Below are positions 16,522-56,415 of a stretch of DNA of 64,000 bases, one piece after another. The stretch comes from Macrostomum lignano (lineage: Eukaryota). Under the pieces are notes generated by a model that was given only the letters and a program-made list of their open reading frames with translations, was not told the DNA's origin and made no database searches. Location: positions 282,849 through 346,848 of the forward strand of contig NIVC01001166.1 of NCBI GenBank assembly GCA_002269645.1, written 5' to 3'. Each line of letters starts with the position of its first letter. The first letter of the stretch is position 1. Both the position numbers and the translations under genes were made by a program.

Positions 16522-19500
16522 TCAAATAATGCCAGTCTCCCTAATCCTGGTGGCCGTCTGCAGCCGCTCGAAGCTCATCCGGCTGAGATCAATAGTCTTG
16601 TACTGCCTGAACAGCACCAGCTCGCTGACCGCCCGCCCGATGGCGACCGCGTGCTGAATGCCGTGGCCAGAGGAACCATTGCAGAAGATCAGATTTTCGT
16701 GAAAGGGGTGCCGGCCGATCACCAGGTTCTGGTCGAAGGTGTTGTAGTCGTAGAAGCCTGCCCACGCGTTGCGCACCTTCACCGCCTCCATGCAGGGCAC
16801 GCGGTGGGCCAGCCGGGGCCAGACCTGCTTGTCGAACCAGTCGTAGTCGGGCTCGAGGTCCACGCCGTTGCACTCGGGCTCGTCCTGCGGCCGGGTGGGG
16901 TGAGATTAGATGCGGAATAGATGCATCTGCAGGTTGCAAGTGAGATTAGATGCAGAATAGATGTATCTGCAGGTTGCAAGTGAGATTAGATGCAGAATAG
17001 ATGTAGCTGCTGGTAGCAGGTGAGATTAGATGCAGAATAGATGTAGCTGCTGGTAGCAGGTGAGATTAGATGCAGAATAGATGTAGCTGCTGGTTGCAGG
17101 TGAGATTAGATGCAGAATAGATGTAGCTGCAGGTGAGATTAGATTGAGAAGAGATGTAGCTGCAGGTTGCAGGTGAGACTAGATGCAGAATGCTCTGTTT
17201 ATTGAAGAGCCTTCGCAAAGTATTGCAGAATGCCTTCTTTGAGGATAGCTAAACAAATTGAAATTGTTATAATTGAGGAGCCAATTTCAATTTACTGCAA
17301 AAATCATTATAAAAATTGGCCAATCGACAATTTAGCAAATTGCAGAATTTATAATCCTATAATTGGCCAGGCGGCTCAATCAGGAACAAGGATGATTATT
17401 GAACTAAATAGAACAGACAAGACAACTCGCTTATTTTTAGTAATTGCTAATGATCTAGCCAGCATGTTGGCTTAGCCTTAGATAACTGAGGGTTTGCCTT
17501 TAAACTGCCGCATGGTCGGCAGAGCAGGCCTTGACCGAATACTTCTGAGTTCTAACAGAGCCTTTCCTGCCGAAAATAGCCAAATTAACGCTGACAACAG
17601 TCCTTTAAGATTTTAGTCTGTTAGCAGACTTCTATAAGTGAAACTGCATAGCTGATGGCCACATGGTTATGTACACACTGTAGACAAAGTATCTAAAATT
17701 TGCTACAGGTGATTAGTCTAGCTCGTATGCAGTGTACAGTGCAGTGTACAGCCAAGTCTTACTATAGAAAAAATCCTCATTCTCGGTAGAAAATACTTTG
17801 CATAGCAGAGTGTGAAAGTGGCAGCAATAGTCTATGGCCAGCCCTGCTGATCAAGCCGGCAGGAACGGCTTTGCATAGCAGTGTTAAAGTGGCAGCGATA
17901 GTCTATGGCCAGCCCTGCTGACCAAGCCGGCGAAAAACTAATTTTATTATTTCAGACATATTAAAGAAACAAATATGGCAAAACACTCTGCACACTACTG
18001 AGAATGCTCTTGTTAGTAGGATAAAAAGAGAAAAAGCTCCGAGATGCAATTTCTATGCAGAAATCAGGCAGTTTGAAAGTACCGGAACCGCCGATTCTGA
18101 TAGCTGATCGACAGGTAGAGGCGGTGGCGGATTAACGTAGGTGACAAAATCGCCCTGGAAACCGTCGCGTCTCAAGTGCAGACCACTGTCAACGTCCTGA
18201 ATAAACGGAGCGTCGATGCCGGGGGTGGCGGCGGCAGCCTTCTTGGCGGCGTGCGGCGGCAGGCTGACAACAAAGACTGACTGCCGCCTAAAAGCAGTAG
18301 TATGGAGCGCGAGTTTTGCTGGGGATTTTACTTAGCAAATCTAGTAGAAATCTTGAAGGCGAGATTAAGGTTTCGGCAGATCACCCTGCCAGTCCAGATG
18401 GCTAATTTTAGAACTCCTTGCGCCAGTCAGGGACCCCTGAAATCTGAGACTGGATTGGAAACCAGCGAGCCTAAGAAAACGCCGCAAATTCACATTAATT
18501 CTAGAAATTCTAGAAATAAATAATCAATTTTGATTACTTTAAAAAACCTTCCAATCCAAAGCATTTAGCAGTCCATGCGCATACCTACAATACCCCAGCC
18601 TATATTTGTAACTAAAGCAAAGTTTATAAGGCTTGCCTGCCGTTCGACGAAGCTTTCTATGGGAAACGGCTGGTTTGCGGGATGGCAAAACTGGGAGACT
18701 GGAAAGAAAATAACGGGACGAGGGGCAGACATAGGGAATCGGTTAAAGGGGCTTTAGCAGAGCGGGGGATATTTTGGCGGGAACACGAGAGACAGAGAGA
18801 GAGCGCGGGGAATGAGCGAGGAGCCGCGTGGCCTACCGGCCTCTCTAGGGGGGGGGGGGGGCGGCAGTAAACTCTGGCGGCGCGAAAGATGAATATTTTC
18901 GGGGCCGCATGCTTGGAAGGCAGACGAGCCCTGACTGCAGGGAAGCCAAAAATAGGCCTAGAGACGGGATCCGGGATTCTGGTGGACCTGCGTTTAGCCT
19001 ATAAGCAATACAGCATGGCATACAAAAGTGCGCAGTGCTCGCGCATTAACTCCAGTCTGAACTGGGACAAAAAGCAGTTCTGAGCGCTCTTCAATTATAA
19101 GCTAAGAACTCAACAGAATAGATAAGCTACTTAGCCTAAGGACTGATAGCTTGTACAAGTATTTTACAGGTTCGAAGCTGGAATTTGATAAGGCCAACCT
19201 TAGCTAGTCAGAGGACAAACATATTTGAATGTCACTCTTAATTCTGGCTCTTTTTTACCGATTGGATTGTTCTCATATGAGATCTCATACCTGATTGAAC
19301 AATCCTCATCTGAGATCTCATATCGAATTGAACAATTCTCATCTGAGATCTCATACCCGAATGAATAATTCTAATCTGACATCTCATACCTGATTGAATA
19401 ATTCTAATCTGACATCTCATACCTAATTGAACAATTCTCATCTGAGATCCCATATCTAATTGAACAATTCTCATCTGAGATCTCATACCTGATTGAACAA

Positions 19501-22500
19501 TTCTCATCTGAGATCTCATACCTGATTGAACAATTCTCATCTGAGATCTCATACCTGATTGAACAATTCTCATCTGAGATCTCATACCTGATTGAACAAT
19601 TCTCATCTGAGATCTCATACCTGATTTAACGATTCTCATCTGAGATCTCATACCTGATTGAACAATTCTCATCTGAGATCTCATACCTGATTGAACAATT
19701 CTTATCTGAGATCTCATAAGCAATTAAGTAAATTCTGGGATCTAATAACCGATTGAATAAAATCTCATCTGAGATCTCATACCTAAACGAACAGTTCTCA
19801 CTGAGTTATTATACCTGTCCCAATCCAGCAAATGGTCGGGAAAGAATGCAACAGAGTCGGCAGGGCGTGGCCAGTGTACCAGCTGCATAAAGCACACACG
19901 ATGGAGGGGCAGAACAGCTGGGGGGAGGGGGGCAAAGACAAATCGCAAGCAAAAGGGAAATCAGCGGCGACATTCCGGTGCGATCCTCCCAGGTGAAGAA
20001 AGTGCACCGAAGCCACCCAGAATCTGCCTGCTTCTGTGCAAAATTAACAGGCAGAAAAAGCAAAGGTTTGGTTGGCCAGAGTTTATAAAGTTTCTGTAGC
20101 GAGTCCTCAATACAAAGTCAACAAAATCAGCTGGTTGCAATTGCGAATTGATGCTTGAACAATTTGAAGCTCGATTTCTCATAGCGCTAATCAGGTGCAC
20201 ACGGCAGGCCAAGCAGCGGCAAGCCTTACTCTGAGACCTGGCTCCATTCCAGCCTGAGATTCAGTCTGATTCCAGCCTGAGATTCAGTCTGATTCCAGCC
20301 TGAGATTCAGTCTGATTCCAGCCTGAGATTCAGTCTGATTCCAGCCTGAGATTCAGTCTGATTCCAGCCTGAGATTCAGTCTGATTCCAGCCTGAGATTC
20401 AGTCTGATTCCAGCCTGAGATTCAGTCTGATTCCAGCCTGAGATTCAGTCTGATTCCAGCCTGAGATTCAGTCTGATTCCAGCCTGAGATTCAGTCTGAT
20501 TCCAGCCTGAGATTCAGTCTGATTCCAGCCTGAGATTCAGTCTCATTCCAGCCTGAGATTCAGTCTGATTCCAGCCTGAGATTCAGTCTGATTCCAGCCT
20601 GAGATTCAGTCTGATTCCAGCCTGAGATTCAGTCTGATTCCAGCCTGAGATTCAGTCTGATTCCAGCCTGAGATTCAGTCTGATTCCAGCCTGAGATTCA
20701 GTCTGATTCCAGCCTGAGATTCAGTCTCATTCCAGCCTGAGATTCAGTCTCATTCCAGCCTGAGATTCAGTCTGATTCCAGCCTGAGATTCAGTCTCATT
20801 CCAGCCTGAGATTCAGTCTCATTCCAGCCTGAGATTCAGTCTGATTCCAGCCTGAGATTCAGTCTGATTCCAGCCTGAGATTCAGTCTGATTCCAGCCTG
20901 AGATTCAGTCTGATTCCAGCCTGAGATTCAGTCTGATTCCAGCCTGAGATTCAGTCTGATTCCAGCCTGAGATTCAGTCTGATTCCAGCCTGAGATTCAG
21001 TCTGATTCCAGCCTGAGATTCAGTCTGATTCCAGCCTGAGATTCAGTCTGATTCCAGCCTGAGATTCAGTCTGATTCCAGCCTGAGATTCAGTCTGATTC
21101 CAGCCTGAGATTCAGTCTCATTCCAGCCTGAGATTCAGTCTCATTCCAGCCTGAGATTCAGTCTGATTCCAGCCTGAGATTCAGTCTCATTCCAGCCTGA
21201 GATTCAGTCTCATTCCAGCCTGAGATTCAGTCTGATTCCAGCCTGAGATTCAGTCTGATTCCAGCCTGAGATTCAGTCTGATTCCAGCCTGAGATTCAGT
21301 CTGATTCCAGCCTGAGATTCAGTCTGATTCCAGCCTGAGATTCAGTCTGATTCCAGCCTGAGATTCAGTCTGATTCCAGCCTGAGATTCAGTCTCATTCC
21401 AGACAAATTTTAGAGTTCGGCTGGCAAGGGAATACCTCGTCACTCAGGGGTGACAGGCCGGCAATGTAGTGGCCTCCGGGACCCTCGGCTCGCAGGTAGG
21501 CTCCAGAGGGACAATTGAGCAGAGGCGTGGGGAATAGATCCTCTTTGCAGTGCAGGTGGAAAACGTAACGAAGGCTGGTTGCATGGGATTAAGGGAGAAA
21601 AACAATTATTTCAAAACAACACAGGTGGTCCTTCAGAGGACCGTCACTACCCTCAGGGCCTTCAGTGAACTGCTGCTACCCTCAGGGCCTTCAGTGAACT
21701 GCTGCTACCCTCAGGTCCTTCAGTGAATTGCTGCTACCCTCAGGTCCTTCAGTGAATTGCTGCTACCCTCAGGTCCTTCAGTGAACTGCTGCTACCCTCA
21801 GGGCCTTCAGTGAACTGCTGCTACCCTCAGGGCCTTCAGTGAACTGCTGCTACCCTCAGGTCCTTCAGTGAACTGCTGCTACCCTCAGGGCCTTCAGTTG
21901 GCTGGTCCGCTGCCACCCTGACTTAAAAAATAAGCAGAACTCACCGAGGCTCCACCGGCAGTTTAACTTTGCCAGCAAAATCACCAACGCCGGCCAGGTG
22001 CGCCACGTGACCCGCCCAGGGTCCGGCCGCGTTCACAACCACGCCGAAGTTGATGTTGCGGACCAGGTTGTCCGGGCACTTCACCTGGGATTGGGATGCA
22101 AGCGTATTGAGGGTCTCATTAGCTGTATGTGTTGTTTGTCTGCCCGCCTGCCTGCCTTACCGTCAGTCTACGAGTCTTCAAGTGCCTGTCTTAATGCATG
22201 TCTTAGCGCATGACTTAATGCATGTCCTAGCGCCTGTCCTAATGCATGTCTTAGCGCCTGTCTTAATGCATGTCTTAGTGTCTGTCCTAGTGCCTGTCTT
22301 AGCGCCTGTCTTAATGCATGTCTTAGTGTCTGTCCTAGTGCCTGTCTTAGCGTCTGTCTTAATGCATGTCTTAGTGTCTGTCCTAGTGCCTGTCTTAGCG
22401 CCTGTCTTAATGCATGTCTTAGTGTCTGTCCTAGTGCCTGTCTTAATGCATGTCTTAGTGTCTGTCCTAGTGCCTGTCTTAGCGCCTGTCTTAATGCATG

Positions 22501-25500
22501 TCTTAGTGTCTGTCCTAGTGCCTGTCTTAGCGCCTGTCTTAATGCATGTCTTAGTGTCTGTCCTAGTGCCTGTCTTAGCGCCTGTCTTAATGCCTGTCTT
22601 AGTGTCTGTCCTAGTGCCTGTCTTAGCGCCTGTCTTAATGCATGTCTTAGTGTCTGTCCTAGTGCCTGTCTTAGCGCCTGTCTTAATGCATGTCTTAGTG
22701 TCTGTCCTAGTGCCTGTCTTAGCGCCTGTCTTAATGCATGTCTTAGTGTCTGTCCTAGTGCCTGTCTTAGCGCCTGTCCTAATGCATGTCTTAGTGTCTG
22801 TCCTAGTGCCTGTCTTAATGCATGTCTTAGTGTCTGTCCTAGCGCCTGTCTTAATGCATGTCTTAGTGTCTGTCCTAGTGCCTGTCTTAGCGCCTGTCTT
22901 AATGCATGTCTTAGTGTCTGTCCTAGTGCCTGTCTTAGCGCCTGTCTTAATGCATGTCTTAGTGTCTGTCCTAGTGCCTGTCTTAGCGCCTGTCTTAATG
23001 CATGTCTTAGTGTCTGTCCTAGTGCCTGTCTTAGCGCCTGTCTTAATGCATGTCTTAGTGTCTGTCCTAGTGCCTGTCTTAGCGTCTGTCTTAATGCATG
23101 TCTTAGTGTCTGTCCTAGTGCCTGTCTTAGCGCCTGTCTTAATGCATGTCTTAGTGTCTGTCCTAGTGCCTGTCTTAATGCATGTCTTAGTGTCTGTCCT
23201 AGTGCCTGTCTTAGCGCCTGTCTTAATGCATGTCTTAGTGTCTGTCCTAGTGCCTGTCTTAGCGCCTGTCTTAATGCATGTCTTAGTGTCTGTCCTAGTG
23301 CCTGTCTTAGCGCCTGTCTTAATGCATGTCTTAGTGTCTGTCCTAGTGCCTGTCTTAGCGCCTGTCTTAATGCATGTCTTAGTGTCTGTCCTAGTGCCTG
23401 TCTTAGCGCCTGTCTTAATGCATGTCTTAGTGTCTGTCCTAGTGCCTGTCTTAGCGCCTGTCTTAATGCATGTCTTAGTGTCTGTCCTAGTGCCTGTCTT
23501 AGCGCCTGTCCTAATGCATGTCTTAGTGTCTGTCCTAGTGCCTGTCTTAATGCATGTCTTAGTGTCTGTCCTAGCGCCTGTCTTAATGCATGTCTTAGTG
23601 TCTGTTCTAGTGCCTGTCTTAGCGCCTGTCTTAATGCATGTCTTAGTGTCTGTCCTAGTGCCTGTCTTAGCGCCTGTCTTAATGCATGTCTTAGTGTCTG
23701 TCCTAGTGCCTGTCTTAGCGCCTGTCTTAATGCATGTCTTAGTGTCTGTCCTAGTGCCTGTCTTAGCGCCTGTCTTAATGCATGTCTTAGTGTCTGTCCT
23801 AGTGCCTGTCTTAGCGTCTGTCTTAATGCATGTCTTAGTGTCTGTCCTAGTGCCTGTCTTAGCGCCTGTCTTAATGCATGTCTTAGTGTCTGTCCTAGTG
23901 CCTGTCTTAGCGCCTGTCTTAATGCATGTCTTAGTGTCTGTCCTAGTGCCTGTCTTAGCGCCTGTCTTAATGCATGTCTTAGTGTCTGTCCTAGTGCCTG
24001 TCTTAGCGCCTGTCCTAATGCATGTCTTAGTGTCTGTCCTAGTGCCTGTCTTAATGCATGTCTTAGTGTCTGTCCTAGCGCCTGTCTTAATGCATGTCTT
24101 AGTGTCTGTTCTAGTGCCTGTCTTAGCGCCTGTCTTAATGCATGTCTTAGTGTCTGTCCTAGTGCCTGTCTTAGCGCCTGTCTTAATGCATGTCTTAGTG
24201 TCTGTCCTAGTGCCTGTCTTAGCGCCTGTCTTAATGCATGTCTTAGTGTCTGTCCTAGTGCCTGTCTTAGCGCCTGTCTTAATGCATGTCTTAGTGTCTG
24301 TCCTAGTGCCTGTCTTAGCGCCTGTCTTAATGCATGTCTTAGTGTCTGTCCTAGTGCCTGTCTTAGCGCCTGTCTTAATGCATGTCTTAGTGTCTGTCCT
24401 AGTGCCTGTCTTAGCGCCTGTCTTAATGCATGTCTTAGTGTCTGTCCTAGTGCCTGTCTTAATGCATGTCCTAGCGTCTGTCTTAATACCTGCCCCAGTG
24501 TCCTAGTGTATCATAAATGACTTACTGCCTGTCCTAACACCTGGCTTAGTGGTTGTCTTATCTGTATGACATTACACAAACGGTGCCTCTGTACCTACCA
24601 GAGCAGCCTTCAGCCGCTCCTGTTCAAATTAGGTTAAGCAATTATTTATAATAGATAGATACGAGTACCTATCACTGACTTACAAAAACTTTTTATGACG
24701 TCATTCAATTTTTCCAATCACGCTATATAACCCTAGCTAATTAACCAGAGACAGACAGCTATTTAATGACGTCATCAAACCCTAGCCAATCAGAGACAGC
24801 TTTTTAATGACGTCATCAAATCGACCTCATCAAACCCTGACCAATCAGAGACCGACAGTTTTTAATGACATCATACTGCACTAACTAAATCAGTCAGTGA
24901 CCGGAATCGCCCCAGCAACCATGAATAAAGAAAAGCTACAAACCGAAGGCTCCCAGAGCGATATCGGACACATTCAGCCATGGCCAGGTCTCTTTCATCT
25001 TCTCCGGCGACATGAGGTCCACTTTTGCGCCAAGCTTCCTGACAGGCGGTAAATGAATAAGGAAAAGTTAATGAGAATTCATTAATGGATACTATAGCTG
25101 TTTTAACTGACCTCTGAGCCTGATTGTTCGTACGCAGGGTCTCTGCGTTCGCCTCATCTGCCAGGACCAAGTAGCCATGAGGGGCGTAGCAAATGTCCGG
25201 CGGGTCCAGGTCTGAGGGACAGAGTGAGGGTGGGTTGGGTGGAACGGCCCGTTGAGCTTGAGCAATGGCACCAGAAGCACGTGTGATCAGGATGGGATCA
25301 CAGAAGAAAATGAAATCACAGAATCCAATTATTAGAATCATAGAAGTTAATGAGATCACTGAAGCCAATGGGATCACAGATGCCGATGGGATCACTGAAG
25401 CCAATGGGATCACAGATGCCAATGGGATCACCGAAGCCAATGGGATCACCGAAGCCAATGGGATCACTGAAGCCAATGGGATCACTGAAGCCAATGGGAT

Positions 25501-26700
25501 CACAGATGCCAATGGGATCACTGAAGCCAATGGGATCACAGATGCCAATGGGATCACCGAAGCCAATGGGATCACCGAAGCCAATGGGATCACTGAAGCC
25601 AATGGGATCACAGATGCCAATGGGATCACTGAAGCCAATGGGATCACAGATGCCAATGGGATCACCGAAGCCAATGGGATCACCGAAGCCAATGGGATCA
25701 CTGAAGCCAATGGGATCACAGATGCCAATGGGATCACAGGAAACCCAAGGGGATGAAAAAACTTGACGAAATCAGAAAATCTCGTGGGATCACAGGACGG
25801 AATGGGAAGTCATTAAGTCAAACAGCAGTCTCACCAAACACGGCTAAATTCTCCTTGATGTTGCGCAGAAACTGGGAGCCAAACAGTGACATTTGAATAT
25901 TCTCCGGCTCGGAGAATTGCTGTCGGATGCCACCGCAGGAGAGCGGACTGGCCGCCCTGGTGTAGGCCGGGTCCCGCTCCACCACCACTACGTTGCAATT
26001 GACCTGCCTGCTAAGCCAGTAGGCGACACTGCAACCGATGGCGCCGCCGCCGATCACCAAGGCGTCGCATTCGTCCGGGAAATCTTCGTCCGGATCTGTT
26101 AGCGGAAGCATGCAGAAAGCGTTTAGGATTGAAAGACATTTGAGACTAAGAGCATATAGAAAAGCATCGGGACTCTCAACAGGTGTGGCATCATGAGTCT
26201 CAACAGGTGTGGCATCATGAGTCTTAACAGGTGTGGCATCAGGACTCTTAACAGGTGTGGAATCAGGAGTCTTAACAGGTGTGGCATCAGGACTCTTAAC
26301 AGGTGTGGCATCAGGACTCTTAACAGGTGTGGCATCAGGACTCTTAACAGGTGTGGCATCAGGACTCTTAACCGGTGTGGCATCAGGACTCTTAAAGGGT
26401 TGTTCGTTGGGACTCTGAACAGGTGTAAAATTTTAAACATTATATCCTATTAAATTTGTGGCATCAATGTGGTGAAGAAGAAAAAGAGTAAAAAAAGAAG
26501 AAGAGTAGAAAAACAAATGCAATCTCACCAACAGTATAAGTAGGCCTGTCCTTATTTTCGATTCCTTTCCACGATGGTTGGCTAACCCGCTCCAGGCCCT
26601 GGGTTCGCTTGGGATCGCCGACAAACCTGGTGCCGGTGGGCGTGCAGAGCCGGCGCACTTGGCCGCCCAGCTGCCACAATGCGCGCCCGCTTCGCTGCAT
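16522..26700 (-). CDS. foxred1: FAD-dependent oxidoreductase domain-containing protein 1 (FOXRED1-like); exons 26700-26529, 26095-25835, 25211-25112, 25038-24944, [gap], 24619-24599, 22084-21945, 21574-21436 (or 18287-18083), 16884-16522
   Basis: Arg-rich, acid-poor N-terminus (MQRSGRALWQLGGQVRRL) resembles a mitochondrial presequence. Motifs: GxGxxG (VIGGGAIGCSVAYWL), VVVERDPAYTRAASPLSCGGIRQQFS.PENIQMS, DPPDI...GYLVLA, WPWLNVSDIALGAF, VVNAAGPWAGHVAHLAG...LPVEPR, SGAYLRAEG, VWPRLAHRVP...AWAGFYDYNTFDQN...GHGIQHAVAIGRAVSEL. GT-AG boundaries and phases agree except across 24944/24619. Confidence 0.9.
16900..17190. repeat. ~40-bp minisatellite abutting the last FOXRED1 acceptor
   Basis: Units of CAGGTGAGATTAGATGCAGAATAGATGTAGCTGCTGGTAG. 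Confidence 0.92.
17796..17931 (+). repeat. Dispersed repeat (~70-bp unit in tandem), second copy at 52688-52848
   Basis: GCTTTGCATAGCAGAGTGTGAAAGTGGCAGC.ATAGTCTATGGCCAGCCCTGCTGACCAAGCCGGCAGGAACG occurs at both loci. Confidence 0.85.
18083..18287 (-). CDS. Second, divergent copy of the penultimate FOXRED1 exon (candidate mutually exclusive exon)
   Basis: ttttag|G CGG CAG ... GTT CCG|gtactt. 205 nt, open, phase 2 to 0, the same as exon 21574-21436. Peptide RQSVFVVSLPP...TPGIDAPFIQDVDSGLHLRRDGFQGDF aligns with the FOXRED1 segment [31 protein letters not shown] (recalled from the human protein). Not in the ORF track. Confidence 0.7.
19268..19790. repeat. 33-bp minisatellite (CTCATCTGAGATCTCATACCTGATTGAACAATT)
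   Basis: Direct observation. Confidence 0.94.
20246..21403. repeat. 23-bp minisatellite (TTCCAGCCTGAGATTCAGTCTGA), ~50 units
   Basis: Nearly invariant; the only variant is G/C (TCTGA/TCTCA). Confidence 0.97.
21630..21897. repeat. 29-bp minisatellite filling a FOXRED1 intron
   Basis: Units of CCTTCAGTGAACTGCTGCTACCCTCAGG[G/T]. Confidence 0.95.
22180..24500. repeat. 12-bp-based satellite with 60-bp (and 48-bp) higher-order repeat
   Basis: Five 12-mers (GTCTTAATGCAT, GTCTTAGTGTCT, GTCCTAGTGCCT, GTCTTAGCGCCT ...) recur in order; this is the source of the spurious 818-aa ORF. Confidence 0.97.
24690..24875. promoter_or_regulatory. Repeated CRE (TGACGTCA) and CCAAT-box cluster inside a FOXRED1 intron
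   Basis: TGACGTCA at 24696, 24767 and 24808; TGACATCA at 24866; CCAATCA at 24714, 24786 and 24841; TATATAA at 24724. Function is not demonstrated. Confidence 0.35.
25348..25738. repeat. 18-bp minisatellite (GCCAATGGGATCACTGAA)
   Basis: Direct observation; FOXRED1 intron 2. Confidence 0.96.
26172..26425. repeat. 24-bp minisatellite (AACAGGTGTGGCATCAGGACTCTT)
   Basis: Direct observation; FOXRED1 intron 1. Confidence 0.95.
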
Positions 26701-28810: not shown

Positions 28811-29212
28811 TCAATACCCGGAATTGGTCAGGGCTTCCTTGATTTTAGAGGCGGCGAAGTTCACCCGCTGGCAGCCGGCCATGGAGGCCTGCTCGCCCTC
28901 TTCGGCCAGGTAGCCGCCAACAATGACGGCCTGGCCGGTGCGCATCGCCGACAGGCTGGACGGCCCGCTGCGAGCGTCAATCTCGCCGTCCTGCAAGCGC
29001 AGAGTCATAAACCGGCGGCCCTGGAAGCTGAAGGCGGAGAATTCGCCGGCGCTCGACTTGCCGGTGCCGGCGACCAGGGCCTGCACCTCAGCCTGGCTGG
29101 GGCTGCACTGGCCGGACTGGGCCCACACGGACCCGTCTAGGCCAAATATGGCGGCCGCATTGACGCCCGGATACTGCATCATGTTGTCTACCCACGGTTG
29201 CCAAGAGGACAT
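28811..29212 (-). CDS. Profilin, single coding exon, 133 aa
   Basis: MSSWQPWVDNMM...AAAIFGLDGSVWAQS...FSFQGRRFMTLR...DARSGPSSLSAMRTGQAVIVGGY...KIKEALTNSGY matches the profilin pattern (N-terminal W..YVD-like, G.DGSVWA, C-terminal L..SGY). An acceptor (ctgtag|) lies 49 nt upstream of the ATG, at 29261. Confidence 0.92.
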   Translation of the reverse strand: MSSWQPWVDNMMQYPGVNAAAIFGLDGSVWAQSGQCSPSQAEVQALVAGTGKSSAGEFSAFSFQGRRFMTLRLQDGEIDARSGPSSLSAMRTGQAVIVGGYLAEEGEQASMAGCQRVNFAASKIKEALTNSGY

Positions 29213-30510
29213 GATGTTGGCTTTGGACCGGATTAGGGCATGCAATAAGCAATACTTTTAGCTACAGGAGCAGTTTTTTTACAGGTGTTAAACCTGTATT
29301 TTTTAGATTTTCGATGTTTTGCTAGGCGCCCTAAATTAACCTTTGTCAACTTTTAAACAGCCTTCAATTTAAGTGGATATAATGTAGAGTCATAGATTCA
29401 GAGCATTGGATAGCATCATTATTAGAGACAAAAGGGCTGTGTGCACCCCAGTAAACTTTAATTAACATTGAAACCAGCAAGAGACATGACTGCCTATTCT
29501 GCCAACTCCCTTGAGCAGGCACACAAAGATGCAGATGTGAACTCAATCAGATGCACAGGGGTACATACAAGAATGTACATAGGGACCCAAACTTTTTTTC
29601 ATAAGGCATATACATTTTACTGTGCATTGGGATTGACCCTCAAAGGGCAATAATTGTACAAGCAGACCCAAGCTAGGATTCTAATTTAACCCTGAATATA
29701 AGGTTTAATTTACCTATCAAGAGTAAATTTATTTAAATCAAAGTTAGTTTTAAGTATATTTATAATTGTTAAAAATAGAATTAACCATTTAGTATTTACT
29801 TTAGTTCCATAAACTAATTTGCAGAACTAAAGTAGTAACAATTCTATCTCAACCAATACCATAAATTATACACATGCAATTCTCAGAGATTATATTAGCT
29901 ATACAACTTGGCTTGGAAATGTAAGTTACTTTTGCAACTTTCTAAAAGTGACTTTCTAAAAATATTTAAAATAGTTATAAATTAACTATAAAGATTTTTC
30001 ATCTTTTTCATCTTTTTTTTCATAAGATATTGCATGTCATATAGAGTTATATTGAGATGTCATTAATTTATATATATATATATATATATAATATTGATTG
30101 ATTGCAATATTCCAAAGAAATATAATATATTATATAAGATAAAAATAACTTAATAAAAATATAAATTTTGAGACATGTTTTGAGACAATAAAAGCTCAAT
30201 AATATAGAGGTAAAGTTTGCAATTTAATATGATCAAATAGCTATTATAGAACCTAAACATTGATATGGGCTTTGGCCTTATGCATGATAGCATGATAATA
30301 AAAAATTGTTGTCTCTATAGCAAAGTTTATTAAATAAAAAATTAGTATTATATAAAGATGTATAGAACATATTATTTTTAATTATCATAAGTAAAATTTA
30401 AGTTATTATTTAATTTATTATATATAATTTTATTATACTTTCAAAGATGCAATTTTTGAAAAAAAACATGTAATTTTAACACGTAACAAAGTCCTAAGAA
30501 GTCTAATACC

Positions 30511-46900: not shown

Positions 46901-49900
46901 GAATAAATTCACTTGAAGTGCCTCTAAAAGCGGTCAGTAACTTCTCAGCGCGCTCTGCAGCATATTGAACACAATCTCCTCCTGATATATTGCCAGGAGC
47001 GGGCTGTGGAAACCACATGAAAGGGCCCAGAAAGAGAAGCCATGCAGGAAATCGGAGACAATTGAACCACGATGAAGGAAAGGCCGAGCCTGAATAAACA
47101 AAAGAGAAGCAGGCAAAGAGCACACAAAGCCAGATGATCGGCTGCTCAGCAGAAAAGACCAAGCCGGCTCCCACAGCCGCCTTCTTCCTGCACAGGAGAG
47201 TTTTCACTCGCTCTATAGTTTTCATTGCTGGGCCATCCAAACAGCAGCGGCAGCAGGCCAAAGGGATTGGGGCTGAGCAGGGATAGGGGCAAGCAGAAAT
47301 AGCTCAGACTGAGTTGAGCCAGACCAGCACGGCTGGGACGGCTGGCAGCAACAGACCCCGGTTGAAGAGGGGAAACTTTTCTCCCCCAGCTCCCAGCGTA
47401 AGCGTATAAAGCAGCCCTCCAGTTAATCTTCTCCCATCTACTAAAAAGCAGATAGCGCGCGTAACAGCAGTTTTCTAAATTGCTATTGTTGCAGAGCATC
47501 GCAGATTGTGATGCTGACGCATCAGATTTTGAGTCACCGATAGCCGAAATGCAACAGAGACGCAGGGACCGAGGCGGCATAGCCATCTGGCACCGTCTGA
47601 GCGCCATCAGCGAGGCTTCCGACGACCGAGCGACGAGTTCAGCCGATGACGAGGAGATCAACACCAGCATTGCCGAGGTGCGAGAGTTTCACGAGCAGTT
47701 CGGCCGTGACAGCGGTGGCAGGAGCAGCGCCAGCCATCGCTCCGGCAAGCGATTCGCAACGCTGATGCGACCCCAACCGGAGGGTCTGGCCGGTGAGCTG
47801 CTCACGCAGCGGGTGACTCAGCTGGATGAGCAGCGCGATTACCAGCCAGCACTGCTCGGCCTTCCAGGACTTCCAGCAGGTGAGCTGAGGTTTCATTTTG
47901 ACCAGCAACTGAGAGCCAATGAAACTAAAAACTGTCGCAGACAGTCTTTTGCTTTCGTTGAATATTTTCCGCTTTCCTAGTTGCTACCTCAGCAAATATC
48001 GATTTCAAGGCTAAGCTAGTACTCACTAAGGGGTTTTCGACGTATTAATTTGCATTATTTATGCGCCCACGAGACCCCAAGTGTTCCAGGCAGTTTCGTG
48101 TGATTTACTCAGAATGTAACTGGACCAACTAGCATTACTAGACCGGCCAATTGGTGTGGGAAAGTCCAAACTAAATGCTCTCGGGGCCCAAAGTATGCGA
48201 GAAAGTTGAGCCTCACCAGCGAATTCTTCCACTCTCTTCTCTCTGCCCTCTCAGGCGGACTCGTGACCGCCGTAGCCTCGTCAAGTGCTCGAATTTTGGA
48301 CTGCACTTCAACCACCGCGCCTGCGGCTGCAGCCTCGGAGGAAGAGGTGGAGGTGCGCGTGACCGCGGAGGCCACGGGGCCCAATCCCAGCGTGGCGCTG
48401 GCCAGGGCGGCCGCCAGGGCAGCCGGAGCTGCTAGTGCGGCAGTGAAAAAGAGCCGCAGCGTTCGAAGCCATTGCGTGAACGCGTCAGAAGCGGAATCGG
48501 AGTACCGCATCTTCATATCAACTTCTTGCACACTGCGAGAGCCGCAGCGCCTAGACGGAGACGGCAAGCTGAAGAACGTAATGAGCTCCACCCAACCTCC
48601 CACAGAGGAAGACATCGTAGAAATTTTTCAAGTGGCACCTGAGCTGCAAGAGTACCAAAGGTGGGCTGTAACTGGGGCCGGCGATGTTGAGTTCGCGTTC
48701 ATATCGGACAGCGAGCCTGGCTCACCGACTCCGGACGTGGAGGAAAATCCACAGCCGAGTTCGCGCTCGCAGCAACAGTCAGCGCTTCTGCAGGCGACTC
48801 AGGCGGCACCAGGTCAACAGCAAGAGCAGCAGCAGCAGCAGCAGAGAGGACGGTTGCCTGGTCCGAATTCGCTGCAGGCTGACCAGCGCAGGCTGCAGGC
48901 TGCTCGAGATGCCTACGCCGCCGTGAAAACGGTACCCACGAGGCCCCGACCAAGTCTATCGCTGCCCCGTCTGAGCAATTCCGTCAGCAATGGAGCGGCT
49001 GGCGCCACTTCAGTGGTAAATAATCAGCGTTGGAGTGACGTCAGCACGAGTTCTGGCAGCCTTCGCCAGCTTCGACGGTTACTGGGTGACGATGAGGCTG
49101 TTTGCGCCTCCCATTCGATGACGGATGGACTGGTGTTGGATCAACAGCAAAGTCGAGAGCTTCAGCAGCGCTCGCAGCCATCAGTAACTGCTCCGAAGTC
49201 GGTGTCCCTGTCTGACCTGTTGGATTCAGACGTCGGAAACAGTGGTAGCATCGATGCTGATGTGTCGCATTCATGCGCTTCTCTGTTGGAAACCGACAAT
49301 GTCAACACATTAACTTCTAAAGAGTCCTTGAAGCAAAGCCTTAAAAGACTAAAATTGCCCTCTAGTCGTCGGGCCGCCGCCGATCAAGCCAAAGTTAGAA
49401 GCGCCAGCTTGTTCTTTGAGTGGTTGGAGCAGAGAGCGAATTCAGAGCGCGAGCGGAGCATCTGCCGTTCTCTGACTCGACTGGAAGCTCCAGTCTGGCT
49501 GGATAACCTTGCTAAAGACGCACCGGAAGCTCCAGTCTGGCTGGATAACCTTGCTAAAGACGCACCGGGACCACTAGATACGTCTCTCCGAGTCAAGGAG
49601 AACCGGAACTCATGGAGACCGTCAGCTACATCAATCGAGCCATCGTCATTGATAAAGGGCAGCGTCGATGAGATTACTTGGAAAACGCGTCCGATACACG
49701 GCAGTCTCAGCTTACCAATGCGCCTGTCCAAGCAAACCAATCGAAGCTCAGATCATGGAAAAGCCAGTAGCACTGATGGAAATTTAAGGATCAAGCAGAC
49801 AAGTGCAGGGACTGATCGAGTCGATGGCAGCATCAGCAACCGAGCTCGCTTCTTTACAGAGAGCAGTCTCAGCCGGCAGGTGCGTCAGGCAGCGGCCGCT

Positions 49901-51631
49901 CAGCCAAGGCCGCCAACACTCTCAGAGCTCGCGGCCAGATTGAACCGGCCGCCACTGTTGCCCGTGACTCTGACGCCTGAAGATTTCCAACCGAAAGCTC
50001 GGGCTCAAACTATGCCTGAGGAGATTCAACCAATGAGCAGCTCCGACGCATCAGCAGGTCAAAAGCGGGACTCGGGCGCTTCTATGGCCTCGGTGACATC
50101 CTCGTCATCAACGACGTCGACATCCTCAAATTCTCAGTCATCGTCTGCGTCGACTAGTAGCGAGACAGGAAATTCGGAAGCAGCAGAGAAGACAGAGGAG
50201 TCCACAGTAGTTCAGACGTCAATAGTGCAGGTGTACACTCGAGTCCTGCATCCCACTGTTAATCACGGCCCAGTGACGCAACACTCGGATGCCGAGCTGC
50301 TGCCGGGGCTTCTAGCGTGCCAGTTAGACCCGACAGGACCATCGACCGAGAACGATCTGATGACGGCACCGAAGCTGTTGAAGCTTGCTGAGGCTCAGAT
50401 CGAGCGTCAACGCAGCAGACTTGCCGAGTGGCAGAACGATGCCGCCGAAGGTCGACCAACAACCGCACGTCAAGAGGAGCTGCTGGCCGTCAATGATGAA
50501 GTGCTGCGCTACTTTCGCGTCAACAGCGGGGGGCCTGACCGTGCCGATCGTCGTCCGGAGTCTCCTTCGCTAGCTGACGATGACGTCTTGCAGGCGCTGG
50601 GTGACTATGAGGCCTCCAGCAAACTTTCTCGTGTCCTCGTGGCCCTCAGCGGAACTAGAGAGCGGAAGTTGCAGCAGCCTCAGAGAAGTCTGGCCGAGGC
50701 CTGCCATGGCGTGATACGAGAAGGTCAGCACTACTTATTGGAGTGCGCAAACCCGTCTTGCGCTCGTCGCTGTGACCTTGACAGACGTCTTGCTAACGGC
50801 TTCCATTCCTGTCGAGAGTGCCGCACATTTTACTGCAGCCAAAAATGCGGCTCCGATCATGCTAGCGCACACGGCCGCTCCTGCTGCTGGAATCGAAGAG
50901 TGGACGCCTGCAAGAGGGTCATCGCTGGCTGCCTTCTTGCCGACACTTCACCTGCAGTGGCGCTACTCTCGCGTCTGGCCCGCGCCTCCTCTCGGAGCTT
51001 TTGTTGGCGCGGATGTCTCCTGTTGGCACTTCGCGATTCAGCCGCGGCTGCCCGATTCGTAACAACCGATGGCAAAGAAGGGCTGATGCGCCCTCCGGCG
51101 CTGCTCGACCTGTCAACTCTCTCCGGCGACCTGGCCGACGCGAGCAAATCCTGCAATCCGGACGCCGCCTTTGTTGTCTGCGTTGTCGTTGGCACCGGCG
51201 TCAAGTGGGCGAAACTCCGTCTGTCGGCGAGGACAAAATCAGACGTGGATACAACCGAGGAGGACGCAGACGCGGACCGCCGGCGCCGCTGGGCCTACCT
51301 GTCGCGGGTGGAGCGATTGCTGCGCGAGCGCGGCGTCAGCCTTCGCCGCCAGTTTCCGCAGCTACGAGAGCGGCTCGTCGCCTACGCGGAGACCGGGGCG
51401 CCGTTCCTGCCAGCCGTGGTCTACCCCACCGACAGGGCCACCGGGCGGGCGTTTGCGTGCCGCCTGGCGCCCGACCGCGAGCCGGAACTCGAATGGGTGC
51501 CTCTCGCCGTCGCCGTTGCGCCTGAGGAACCAGCAAGTTCAGTCGGCGAAGTCGTGGGCGATGCGCCACGAGCAAAGCAGAGGCAGCCGCCGTTTTATCG
51601 TCGCCGGCGGGTTGTGTCCACCGACCTGTAG
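44000..51631 (+). CDS. ajm1: Apical junction component 1 (AJM1/AJM-1)-like protein; exons ~44000-44494/44528, 45719-45768, 47495-47879, 48255-51631
   Basis: The C-terminus has a MYND-like Cys/His cluster (CANPSC...CRECRTFYCSQKC...H...H...C) followed by ERLLRERGVSLRRQFP...Y.E.G..F.P.V.YP.DR.TGR.F.C, which I recognise as the AJM1 family C-terminal region. The N-terminal part is long, low-complexity and Ser/Ala/Gln-rich. The 45768/47495 (phase 0) and 47879/48255 (phase 1) junctions are GT-AG and in frame. The first exon and true start are uncertain. Confidence 0.72.
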
Positions 51632-54492: not shown

Positions 54493-56415
54493 TTAAAACT
54501 TCTTGAAAACCGGATGAGTAACCTCGACGGCCACTCGACGTCTGCAGCTGCCGTGAGACCTCACCTCGAGCCAGTGCTTGCACCGAAACACGAACCCGAA
54601 GTACCGAAACGTCTTCAACGCTGTCAGAAGTCGCAGCAGGTCGAAGGCCACATCGAAGTCACTGATGCACCGCTGGAACGTCTCCGTGACGAACGCGATG
54701 AGAAAGTTCAGCAGGTTGAGGCCCACAAACACGAAGAACAGCACGTGGATGATGAGAACCATCACGCTGTCCAAGCTGAAGGTGATCATGTTGAGGATGA
54801 CCTTGACCGACGAGTAGAGCGACAACAGGCCGGTCTCGAAGTCGGGCGAGTCAACCAAGATGAAGAAGTCCAGGCTGAAGAGAATGATCCAGTAGAACAG
54901 CAGCGGCAGCGCGGCCAGGAAGCTGGACAGCATGCAGTGGAAGGTGAAGAAGAGCTTCCCGACCGACTTCGTCACGATCTCCATGTACTGCGCAAAGTGC
55001 AGCAGCGTGAACGCGATGAAGAGAGTGTTGGACCCAATTAAAAGCTGTTCCATTACACCTCTTGGCTCAAAGTATTCATAAAAATTTTTGAGTTGCAGTG
55101 CTGAAGCGAATATAAAAAAGCTGATTCCGCTTACGAAAGCCACCGCCTGATAGAAATCAAAAGTCGAGCGGCGCACAAAGCGCCCAGTTGAGCTGTCGAT
55201 GGGCGCCACAGTCTTTGTCTTTCGCTGGCACTCAACAAAATAGAGCACCAACTTGATGAGCATAATGACCATATGAAACACGGAGACAAATGTTATCATT
55301 AAATAGCTCAAAAGCATCGAGTCAAATAATTCACCGCAACTATACTTCTTTACCGTCTGGCTGTTAAAAATCTCATGGTACAGCGTCGCGTTGGAAAGAG
55401 ACGATGTGTTGTAGCCTGCCCGAAAAGCGGCGGCAAAGGTTGCTCGGTTGCAGTGAATGAGGTTGCCAAAACAGGCGACTGTCAGCATGATTGATTCGTT
55501 CACGGCAGTAAGAAGAAATACCGATGTTGGAACGCTCATCACCAGCAGCCTCAGAAATGTGATCGCTCGAGTCTGACGGTACGTCAACCGAAGCCACTGT
55601 CGGATGAGAGGGTCCTCCATCAGCTTGGACTTCTTGAGCGACTCGACCTGACTCGACGCTACATAGGTGAGCAGGTGCAGAGGACTCGAGTTGCACCGGC
55701 TCCCGTGACACAGGTCGTAGTCGGTGAGGTCGTAGAGACGGACGGCCCAGCCGCCGGATCGAGTCTCCGATTTCAACAGGTAGTTCGGCAGGTGCAACAT
55801 CTTGCGGGCCAGTCGGAATGCAGCGAACTTCACGCACGCCTCCAGAGGTCGGAGACCGCTCGAGTCCTCCTGGGTGACCAGCCTGTCTAGCAGACGAGGC
55901 TCTCTACTCAGCGTCGAGAGGAGCGCCGTCTCCAGACGCTTGGCTCGCTTGAACCTCGGCGCGTACATCTGGCAGCGAGCCAGACTGTGTACAACGGTGC
56001 TGCCGTCGAGCTCGAGCTGAGCCGCGTGCTCGGAGCTGTCTTCCAACAGAGCCTCGAACACTCGCACGGACTGCAGCAGAATCGCCAGGTGGATCGCGTA
56101 TCCGAACTGCAGACTGACGAAGCCCCACTTTCGGCGACTTCTCGGCAAGCGACACCGGATCTCGTGGCTTTCGGTCACGTCGACCAGAGGCTGGGCGAGC
56201 CTTCCCGACAGGTCCGGCTTCAAAGCTCGCATGAAGGCGTCAGGGTCGTCATCGACCAGAGCAGCCAGCGCCGCTTCTGCCGATTCCATATTGAACAACT
56301 CTTTCAAGTTTGTATCGTTCTGACTCGGCAGCACCCGATTACCTGCAAGAAGTGAAATTCTGTTGCTGGAGCGAACTCTGATAAAGTCGTTAGTAGCCGG
56401 GATCCCTTCGCCCAT
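54493..56415 (-). CDS. Divergent TRPV-like ankyrin-repeat ion channel, copy 1 (intact, 640 aa; shared MESAE start at 56289)
   Basis: Degenerate ankyrin repeats (GYAIHLAILL, DGSTVVHSLA, DSSGLRPLEACVK), LYDLTDYD (cf. TRPV YDLTEID), SPLHLL, then about six hydrophobic segments, a pore region F.TGLLSLYSSVKVILNM and S6 LNLLNFLIAFVTETFQR (cf. TRPV LNLLIAMMGDTHWR). Uninterrupted ORF. Confidence 0.7.
   Translation of the reverse strand: MGEGIPATNDFIRVRSSNRISLLAGNRVLPSQNDTNLKELFNMESAEAALAALVDDDPDAFMRALKPDLSGRLAQPLVDVTESHEIRCRLPRSRRKWGFVSLQFGYAIHLAILLQSVRVFEALLEDSSEHAAQLELDGSTVVHSLARCQMYAPRFKRAKRLETALLSTLSREPRLLDRLVTQEDSSGLRPLEACVKFAAFRLARKMLHLPNYLLKSETRSGGWAVRLYDLTDYDLCHGSRCNSSPLHLLTYVASSQVESLKKSKLMEDPLIRQWLRLTYRQTRAITFLRLLVMSVPTSVFLLTAVNESIMLTVACFGNLIHCNRATFAAAFRAGYNTSSLSNATLYHEIFNSQTVKKYSCGELFDSMLLSYLMITFVSVFHMVIMLIKLVLYFVECQRKTKTVAPIDSSTGRFVRRSTFDFYQAVAFVSGISFFIFASALQLKNFYEYFEPRGVMEQLLIGSNTLFIAFTLLHFAQYMEIVTKSVGKLFFTFHCMLSSFLAALPLLFYWIILFSLDFFILVDSPDFETGLLSLYSSVKVILNMITFSLDSVMVLIIHVLFFVFVGLNLLNFLIAFVTETFQRCISDFDVAFDLLRLLTALKTFRYFGFVFRCKHWLEVRSHGSCRRRVAVEVTHPVFKKF

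What the first reader, a model, noticed from the sequence alone, without database searches (positions are those of the whole stretch)
18083..21574. Hidden pair of divergent, mutually exclusive exons in FOXRED1
Two homologous exons occupy the same slot. A (21574-21436) encodes LRYVFHLHCKEDLFPTPLLNCPSGAYLRAEGPGGHYIAGLSP. B (18287-18083) encodes RQSVFVVSLPP...PGIDAPFIQDVDSGLHLRRDGFQGDFVTY. Both have AG/GT ends and phase 2 to 0, so either joins 21945 to 16884 in frame, while including both shifts the frame. That is the signature of mutually exclusive exons. They are highly diverged yet both remain open, implying selection. In this enzyme family the segment belongs to the substrate-side domain (inference), so one gene may make two specificities or two complex-I assembly isoforms. 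I know of no such arrangement for FOXRED1.
Basis: partly seen in the sequence, partly recalled or inferred. Interest (0 to 1): 0.75.

Follow-up and report, generated by a model that had tools for sequence, protein, structure and literature searches.

The report
Duplicated alternative exons in flatworm FOXRED1
A flatworm (Macrostomum lignano) FOXRED1 gene carries two homologous versions of one exon, of which only one at a time keeps the reading frame; the odd-looking version is the one in the public RNA-based gene models and is conserved in another species, while the normal-looking version is unannotated.

Summary
Exon A (21574-21436, 139 nt) and exon B (18287-18083, 205 nt) lie on the minus strand with AG/GT ends and the same phase. 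Either one alone joins 21945 to 16884 in frame; both together, or neither, shift the frame.

The window is Macrostomum lignano contig NIVC01001166.1. B is not hidden. GenBank proteins PAA71416.1 (this locus) and PAA49751.1 (a 97-98% identical paralogous locus), built from RNA data, both use B and skip A. No database protein found contains A, the canonical-looking exon.

B is truly related to this FOXRED1 segment: profile E=9e-4, second only to A among 2516 six-frame segments. A genomic contig from an unidentified species (run DRR639055) has a B-type exon with the same phase and splice sites, under the same constraint as constitutive exons. A scores like canonical FOXRED1 (E=8e-14) and is intact in both paralogs. 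AlphaFold gives both versions the same strand-loop-hairpin.

Best reading: a tandem-duplicated, mutually exclusive exon pair. Use of A in RNA is inferred, not shown.

Caveat: neither assembled copy encodes full-length FOXRED1. This copy lost most of an upstream exon; the paralog has a nonsense codon. This is a new member of a known kind, of moderate interest.

The parts
25835..26111 (-). FOXRED1 exon with the first in-frame Met and the FAD-binding GxGxxG motif (MLPLTDPDEDFPDECDALVIGGGAIG...NLAVF); donor TTG|gtgaga
   Evidence: tblastn to homologues
25112..25211 (-). FOXRED1 exon (DLDPPDICYAPHGYLVLADEANAETLRTNNQAQ)
24944..25038 (-). FOXRED1 exon E3 (RKLGAKVDLMSPEKMKETWPWLNVSDIALGAF). The annotated CDS of PAA71416.1 starts inside it at 24973, in a shifted frame (MCPISLWEPS)
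24599..24625 (-). 27-nt remnant (EQERLKAAL + gtaggt donor) of the middle exon. The acceptor and 149 of its 176 nt are deleted relative to the paralogue (L002 10411-10584)
21945..22084 (-). Constitutive exon upstream of the slot (VKCPDNLVRNINFGVVVNAAGPWAGHVAHLAGVGDFAGKVKLPVEP + CG); strong donor TCG|gtgagt
21436..21574 (-). Exon A: the canonical-type version of the slot exon. It is unannotated, has an intact ORF and AG/GT ends, and is 139 nt
   Evidence: (E=8e-14)
18083..18287 (-). Exon B: the divergent version of the slot exon, 205 nt. It is the one present in GenBank proteins PAA71416.1 and PAA49751.1, and it has an orthologue in the DRR639055 contig
   Evidence: (E=9e-4)
16522..16884 (-). 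Last coding exon (DEPECNGVDLEPDYDWF...GSSGHG...ETGII*), entered in phase 0 from either A or B
20246..21402 (.). 23-nt tandem array (50 copies) filling the first third of the A-to-B intron; about 4 kb long in the paralogue
22181..24470 (.). 48-nt tandem array (47.5 copies) in the intron next to the deleted exon; only about 0.5 kb in the paralogue

Best explanation
The FOXRED1 gene of Macrostomum lignano contains a tandem-duplicated pair of homologous alternative exons. They encode the strand-loop-beta-hairpin that follows the conserved PVEPR strand of the DAO-type flavoprotein fold.

Shown:
- The donor at 21945 can be joined to A (370 nt away) or to B (3.66 kb away), and each then joins 16884 in frame.
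- Both exons are 1 mod 3. Taking both puts a stop codon inside B, upstream of the last junction. Taking neither puts a stop in the last exon.
- B is the exon in the RNA-derived gene models of both paralogous loci, and it is conserved in another species with the same phase and splice sites.
- A is intact and canonical in sequence.

Inferred:
- The A+B product should be a target of nonsense-mediated decay.
- The duplication predates the split of M. lignano from the DRR639055 species.
- Both copies have been kept by purifying selection since then, so both must be, or until very recently were, spliced into mRNA one at a time. B would be the major form in whole animals and A a minor or condition-specific form.
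- The two forms would differ in residues that, in related oxidases, line the substrate side of the flavin (for example A ..GAYLRAEG.., B ..GLHLRRDG..). This point is from memory and was not tested.

At this particular locus the products are truncated anyway, because an upstream exon is deleted.
For: Geometry and frame.

Homology of B to the slot: family-segment profile gives A E=8e-14, B E=9e-4, next 3.1. The same two hits appear in the paralogue L002. B matches 15 of 24 family-conserved columns and A 18 of 25. B keeps a conserved Asp and an Arg-Arg that A lacks, and B is more like the metazoan orthologues (scores 54-69) than like A (41). So B is not a recent copy of today's A.

B is used: PAA71416.1 (this locus) and PAA49751.1 (paralogue) both read ...LPVEPR|RQSVF...SAVP|DEPECNG. 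The GenBank annotation was built from RNA-seq with StringTie/TACO, a de novo transcriptome and TransDecoder, using --isoform-frac 0.75 (PMC5730564). From my knowledge of TACO, that setting drops minor isoforms.

B is conserved: an exhaustive phmmer search of 1.84 billion representative proteins finds B only in P0001 and in P0126. P0126's contig L003 has the exon at 150-324 (175 nt, 1 mod 3, pyrimidine-rich acceptor ...ccgcag|A, donor GAG|gttagc), followed by the orthologous downstream exons. For the B core, pN=0.285 and pS=0.69. For the constitutive downstream exons, pN=0.268 and pS=0.669.

A is maintained: 22-23 of 41-47 aligned residues match vertebrate and insect orthologues, which is at least as conserved as the rest of the protein. 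Its ORF and splice sites are intact in both paralogues. A and B together show 2 differences in 344 nt between paralogues, against 2.1% in unique intron sequence (7.4 expected, Poisson P about 0.02).

Structure: AlphaFold2 models of the C-terminal fragments give the same elements for both versions. B: strands 54-65, 93-98 and 103-108, pLDDT 77-93, with a short helix in the insertion and a disordered tail. A: strands 46-55, 72-76 and 82-87.

Controls: rotifer, sponge and a metagenomic eukaryote each have only one slot exon.
Against: No transcript or protein containing exon A was found. The query included A, and its best hit was the B-containing model at 77% identity.

The RNA-derived annotation chose B at both loci, so A could be silent today.

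The DRR639055 contig starts only 149 nt upstream of its B exon, so it is unknown whether any other species keeps both exons.

Both assembled M. lignano copies carry disabling lesions upstream, so present-day selection on the gene is in doubt.

The paralogue comparison has little power: 1 difference in each exon, both nonsynonymous.

No convincing RNA-structure selector was found. The only flanking inverted repeat is at chance level.
Confidence: 0.6

Rival explanations
1. Exon replacement rather than alternation. B is now the only exon used in M. lignano FOXRED1. A is a recently retired canonical exon that has not yet had time to decay.
For: Both RNA-derived gene models use B and skip A. No A-containing protein exists in the databases searched. 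The gene shows other signs of recent relaxation: a 174-nt exon deletion here and a nonsense codon in the paralogue.
Against: B already existed before the split from the DRR639055 species, across which synonymous sites are saturated (pS 0.67-0.79). An unused A would have decayed over that time. Instead it scores E=8e-14 against the family profile, with an intact ORF, intact AG/GT ends and exon-like GC in both paralogues. Retirement would therefore have to be very recent. The annotation pipeline's isoform-fraction filter would hide a minor A isoform.
Confidence: 0.27
2. A is the only functional exon. B is a non-functional exonised intron piece or splicing noise that was picked up by the transcript assembler.
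For: A looks canonical. B is only weakly similar to the family (16 bits) and carries an Ala/Pro-rich insertion and a tail predicted to be disordered.
Against: B is in the models of two loci. It has an orthologue with conserved phase and splice sites in another species, and its pN/pS equals that of constitutive exons. It keeps the invariant Pro, Arg and Pro and other conserved columns of the slot. Its core is modelled confidently in the family fold.
Confidence: 0.03
3. Chance resemblance: B is an open stretch of intron that merely looks like the slot exon.
For: BLAST of A against B is not significant on its own (E=3.6).
Against: Profile E=9e-4, second best of 2516 segments. It lies on the same strand, in the same intron and in the same phase. 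Shuffle tests give 0 of 3000. The annotated proteins contain it.
Confidence: 0.01
4. The whole locus is a decaying pseudogene copy, so the A/B arrangement has no present function in M. lignano, whatever it did ancestrally.
For: In the window copy, the ORF from the first Met stops after 191 aa because of the deleted exon. The paralogue has TAG in exon E3. The annotated proteins are 5'-truncated (245 and 312 aa) and lack the GxGxxG FAD-binding start.
Against: The two lesions differ between copies, so each is recent. All other exons are intact and more conserved between the paralogues than the introns are. Assembly errors, or additional intact alleles in this partly polyploid line, cannot be excluded (PMC5730564). 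This reading qualifies the main explanation rather than replacing it.
Confidence: 0.4

Closest known systems
Mutually exclusive exons derived from tandem exon duplication (e.g. human ATE1 7a/7b, SCN alpha-subunit 5a/5b, insect Mhc; reviewed in PMC9013439, PMC8373072, PMC9741552, PMC5740500)
   Same: Two adjacent homologous exons in one slot, with identical phase. Each alone preserves the frame. They encode a homologous substitution of one structural element. The pair appears old, and both copies are conserved.
   Different: The lengths differ by 66 nt (139 vs 205), whereas most such pairs are equal or nearly equal in length. The two copies are unusually diverged (about 10 identical residues over 27 aligned). 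The divergent copy, not the canonical one, is in the gene models. No transcript evidence for the second member is available. No competing RNA structure was found. The intron between them is 3.1 kb and largely tandem repeats.
FOXRED1 (FAD-dependent oxidoreductase domain-containing protein 1; mitochondrial complex I assembly factor, DAO family PF01266)
   Same: Best hits are named FOXRED1 at 45-53% identity over the C-terminal half. Also present: the PF01266 domain, the N-terminal GxGxxG, and the conserved NEGWFDP (in the paralogue), PVEPR, WAG.YDYN and G.SGHG motifs.
   Different: No FOXRED1 with duplicated alternative exons was found in the literature searched or in three control loci. Both assembled M. 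lignano copies are interrupted.
Solved DAO-family oxidases (P. horikoshii sarcosine-oxidase-like 1y56_B, dimethylglycine dehydrogenase, monomeric sarcosine oxidase, glycine oxidase)
   Same: The profile matches 1y56_B at E=1e-36, and the slot aligns to its residues about 225-270 in the non-FAD (substrate-side) part of the fold.
   Different: No FOXRED1 structure is solved. The role of individual slot residues is only a lead from memory of related oxidases and was not tested here.

Membership tests
Tandem-duplication-derived mutually exclusive exons | Neighbouring exons in the same gene, on the same strand, in one slot between the same flanking exons | tested here: met
   A 21574-21436 and B 18287-18083 lie between 21945 and 16884
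Tandem-duplication-derived mutually exclusive exons | Sequence homology between the exons | tested here: met
   Both hit the family-segment profile (8e-14 and 9e-4, next 3.1). A vs B shuffles: 4 of 3000
Tandem-duplication-derived mutually exclusive exons | Same splice phase; each alone keeps the frame; both or neither break it | tested here: met
   139 and 205 nt, both 1 mod 3; explicit translations
Tandem-duplication-derived mutually exclusive exons | Canonical splice sites on both exons | tested here: met
   AG/GT on both, identical in the paralogue; both donors are weaker than those of the constitutive exons
Tandem-duplication-derived mutually exclusive exons | Transcripts containing exon B alone | tested here: met
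   The RNA-derived GenBank models PAA71416.1 and PAA49751.1 contain B and skip A
Tandem-duplication-derived mutually exclusive exons | Transcripts containing exon A alone, and none (or only unstable ones) with both | not testable with these tools
   No read-level RNA data. No A-containing protein in the databases.
Tandem-duplication-derived mutually exclusive exons | Both exons conserved across species | tested here: inconclusive
   B has an orthologue in the DRR639055 contig under purifying selection. A is conserved relative to canonical FOXRED1. Whether one other species holds both is unknown, because the contig ends 149 nt upstream of B
Tandem-duplication-derived mutually exclusive exons | A mechanism that enforces exclusivity (frame/NMD, steric, or competing RNA structures) | tested here: inconclusive
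   Enforcement by frame is shown. Steric hindrance is excluded by the 3.1-kb intron. The only inverted repeat flanking B is at chance level
FOXRED1 / DAO family (PF01266) | DAO domain and closest similarity to proteins named FOXRED1 | tested here: met
   PF01266 is precomputed for P0001; hits named FOXRED1 at 45-53% identity
FOXRED1 / DAO family (PF01266) | One uninterrupted ORF from the FAD-binding N-terminus to the C-terminal G.SGHG region | tested here: not met
   In the window copy the ORF from the first Met stops after 191 aa, owing to the 174-nt deletion. The paralogue has a TAG in E3

The most novel reading that the evidence does not exclude
Flatworm FOXRED1 has maintained, since before the split of M. 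lignano from the DRR639055 species, two interchangeable versions of a substrate-side beta-hairpin (canonical ..GAY.R.EG..Y..G.SP versus ..GLH.RR..F.G.FV..). If so, it produces two biochemically distinct flavoproteins from one gene. That would imply FOXRED1 has a real, tunable ligand or substrate pocket rather than being only a scaffold for complex I assembly.
Probability: 0.3. Interest if true: 0.55.

Novelty: new member of a known kind. Interest (0 to 1): 0.38.

Why it matters
The biochemical activity of FOXRED1 is unknown, although it is a human disease gene for complex I deficiency. A naturally maintained swap of one substrate-side element would point to the part of the protein where specificity resides, and it would supply two natural variants to compare.

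For genome annotation, the case shows that an RNA-based pipeline keeping only major isoforms can report the divergent duplicate and miss the canonical exon. It also shows that both assembled M. lignano copies of this gene are interrupted.

For the evolution of splicing, this would be a rare, strongly diverged, unequal-length pair of mutually exclusive exons outside vertebrates and arthropods.

Tried and rejected
(1) Word-index protein searches with exon B alone and with the upstream exon plus A returned nothing, although P0001 contains those sequences exactly. The index is evidently sparse for short queries, so these negatives carry no weight. The exhaustive phmmer search replaced the first.

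(3) dN/dS between the two M. lignano loci has too little divergence: 1 difference per exon.

(4) dN/dS against species X: synonymous sites are saturated, so only pN and pS are reported. My first attempt used wrong exon offsets. The intron-identity figures from free-end-gap alignment are not meaningful and were not used.

(5) Search for docking/selector RNA pairing: only repeat-internal pairs, plus one 15-nt AT-rich pair flanking B (17267-17281 and 19086-19100). About 0.6 such pairs are expected by chance. It is conserved in the paralogue only because the loci are 98% identical.

(6) Literature: no report of FOXRED1 mutually exclusive exons, no mention of Mlig001036, Mlig010647 or DRR639055.

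(7) Third copy of the slot exon: none in the window or the paralogue.

(8) P0053, close to species X in the C-terminus, turned out to be an intronless canonical-type fragment from metagenomes and says nothing about B.

(9) Pfam on the long ORFs elsewhere in the window gave no hits.


Full report
**What the window is.** The region is eukaryotic, with spliced exons on the minus strand. A 28.5-kb stretch fetched from Macrostomum lignano assembly GCA_002269645.1, contig NIVC01001166.1 (locus L001), is 100% identical to window 6522-34973. The gene is the flatworm FOXRED1: it has the PF01266 DAO domain, and its best hits are named FOXRED1 at 45-53% identity.

**The observation.**
- The upstream exon ends at 21945 (...CCT CG|gtgagt). 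The downstream exon starts at 16884.
- The split codon is Arg with either exon.
- Explicit translation shows that A alone or B alone runs in frame to the natural stop. A+B gives a stop inside B. Neither gives a stop in the last exon (the same holds for the paralogue).

**Is B really a homologue of the slot?**
- I built a profile of the equivalent segment from 119 non-Macrostomum homologues and searched all 2516 six-frame open segments of the window.
- A scored E=8e-14 and B E=9e-4, with nothing else better than E=3. The same two hits appear in the paralogous locus.
- Shuffle tests give 0 of 3000 for B against ape, bug and fly orthologues, and 4 of 3000 for A against B.
- B keeps the invariant Pro, Arg and Pro of the slot. 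It matches 15 of 24 conserved columns, and A matches 18 of 25.
- B resembles canonical metazoan sequences more than it resembles today's A. So it is an old, independently diverged copy, not a recent duplicate.
- No third copy exists. Rotifer, sponge and a metagenomic eukaryote have one slot exon each.

**B is the annotated exon, not the hidden one.**
- GenBank protein PAA71416.1 (BOX15_Mlig001036g2, 245 aa), encoded by this very locus, reads ...KLPVEPR|RQSVFVV...SESAVP|DEPECNG.... That is, it contains B and skips A.
- A second M. lignano protein, PAA49751.1 (BOX15_Mlig010647g1, 312 aa), comes from contig NIVC01003797.1 (locus L002). That locus is 97-98% identical, introns included, and has the same profilin neighbour. 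This protein does the same.
- According to the genome paper, the GenBank annotation derives from RNA-seq (StringTie merged with a mapped de novo transcriptome by TACO, using --isoform-frac 0.75) with ORFs called by TransDecoder (PMC5730564).
- So B inclusion rests on transcript data. Minor isoforms would have been discarded; the meaning of that TACO flag is from my own knowledge.
- A homology-based predictor would have chosen A.
- No protein in the searched collections contains A.

**B is conserved elsewhere.**
- An exhaustive phmmer search of 1.84 billion representative proteins with B found only P0001 and an 81-aa ORF, P0126. The remaining hits were low-complexity.
- P0126 lies on a 2335-nt genomic contig from run DRR639055 (L003). 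The organism is unknown to me.
- There, an exon at 150-324 (175 nt, again 1 mod 3) has a pyrimidine-rich acceptor ...ccgcag|A and donor GAG|gttagc. It encodes RRAAFVVRLPPAGTATPGIDAPSLADPSGLHIRRHDFAGHFVVS....
- After 297 nt comes the orthologue of the downstream exon in phase 0, then one more intron and the terminal exon.
- Between the two species the B core has pN=0.285 and pS=0.69. That is indistinguishable from the constitutive downstream exons, with pN=0.268 and pS=0.669.
- The non-conserved tail of B is also the part AlphaFold leaves disordered.
- The contig begins 149 nt upstream of B, so whether that species also has an A-type exon is unknown.

**A is maintained.**
- A is 22-23 of 41-47 aligned residues identical to vertebrate and insect orthologues, no less conserved than the rest of the protein.
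- It has exon-like GC (0.60, against 0.42-0.53 in the introns). Its ORF and splice sites are intact and identical in the paralogue, where its single difference is Phe to Tyr.
- B existed before the split from the DRR639055 species, across which silent sites are saturated. An unused A would have decayed over that time.
- This is the main argument that both exons have been in use. Given the frame rules, they would be used one at a time.
- It is an inference. I could not obtain junction reads.

**Structure.**
- AlphaFold2 on the C-terminal fragments (58-sequence alignments) gave mean pLDDT 81.6 for the B form and 79.2 for the A form.
- In both, the slot forms a long strand, a loop, and a two-strand hairpin. 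B adds a short helix in its Ala-rich insertion and a disordered Pro-rich tail.
- The nearest solved relative is the P. horikoshii sarcosine-oxidase-like chain 1y56_B (E=1e-36). The slot maps to the non-FAD part of the fold.
- That hairpin residues line the substrate pocket in related oxidases is my recollection, not a test.

**Caveat: the gene copies are damaged.**
- Compared with L002, the window copy lacks 174 nt, with a TTT microhomology at the breakpoints. This removes the acceptor and 149 of the 176 nt of the exon that encodes TENEGWFDPYLF.... A 27-nt remnant sits at 24625-24599.
- Exon 25038-24944 is therefore spliced straight to 22084. The frame shifts, and the ORF from the first Met stops after 191 aa.
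- This explains why PAA71416.1 starts at a Met in a shifted frame.
- The paralogue keeps that exon but has TAG in place of GAG in exon E3. This explains why PAA49751.1 starts at MKETW.
- So neither assembled copy encodes full-length FOXRED1.
- These may be real recent lesions in a partly polyploid, redundant genome (180 Mb of duplicated blocks), assembly errors, or alleles beside intact ones. I cannot tell which.

**Verdict.**
- The interpretation as a mutually exclusive pair is the best-supported reading (about 0.6).
- The main rival is that A was retired recently and B is now the only exon used (about 0.27).
- This is a new instance of a well-known mechanism, tandem exon duplication with frame-enforced exclusivity. 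It has three unusual traits: strong divergence, unequal length, and the divergent copy being the major annotated form.
- The functional claims about two specificities remain speculation.

Noticed in passing
window 24599-24625 and the intron 24943-22085: The window's FOXRED1 copy lacks 174 nt present in the paralogue (L002 10411-10584). The deletion removes the acceptor and most of the exon encoding TENEGWFDPYLF..., so the full-length reading frame is broken (stop after 191 aa).
   Followed up: yes
L002 about 9994 (equivalent to window about 25004): The paralogous copy on NIVC01003797.1 has TAG where the window has GAG in exon E3. With the deletion above, neither assembled copy of the gene encodes a full-length protein.
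   Followed up: partly
window 16899-17191, 19270-19817, 20246-21402, 21647-21898, 22181-24470, 25292-25739: Nearly every intron of the gene holds a long tandem array (units of 40, 33, 23, 29, 48 and 18 nt). Copy numbers differ strongly between the two 98%-identical loci: the 23-mer array is 1.2 kb here and about 4 kb in L002, and the 48-mer array is 2.3 kb here and about 0.5 kb in L002.
   Followed up: partly
window about 28811-29227 (-): A profilin gene (PF00235) lies upstream of FOXRED1 and is in the same position at the paralogous locus.
   Followed up: no
window 54493-56415 (-), 58153-59448 (+), 62449-63648 (-): Three long ORFs encode near-identical N-terminal halves (MESAEAALAALVDDDPDAFMRALKPDL...) followed by hydrophobic stretches. 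They look like a local gene family and have no Pfam match.
   Followed up: partly
window 48206-51631 (+): A 1141-codon open frame rich in Ser, Ala, Leu and Arg, with no Pfam match. Not examined further.
   Followed up: no
L003 788-950: In the DRR639055 species an extra intron splits, at ...DQNLIIG|NHPYF..., what is a single last exon in M. lignano.
   Followed up: no
L004-L012 (metagenome and Logan contigs carrying P0053): An intronless, canonical-type FOXRED1 fragment recurs in several metagenome assemblies. It shares the unusual NGSSGHG motif with M. lignano and the DRR639055 species. The organism is unknown.
   Followed up: partly
(tool behaviour): The word-indexed protein search missed exact matches to short queries: P0001 contains both queries' sequence. 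Its negative results for short peptides should not be trusted.
   Followed up: yes
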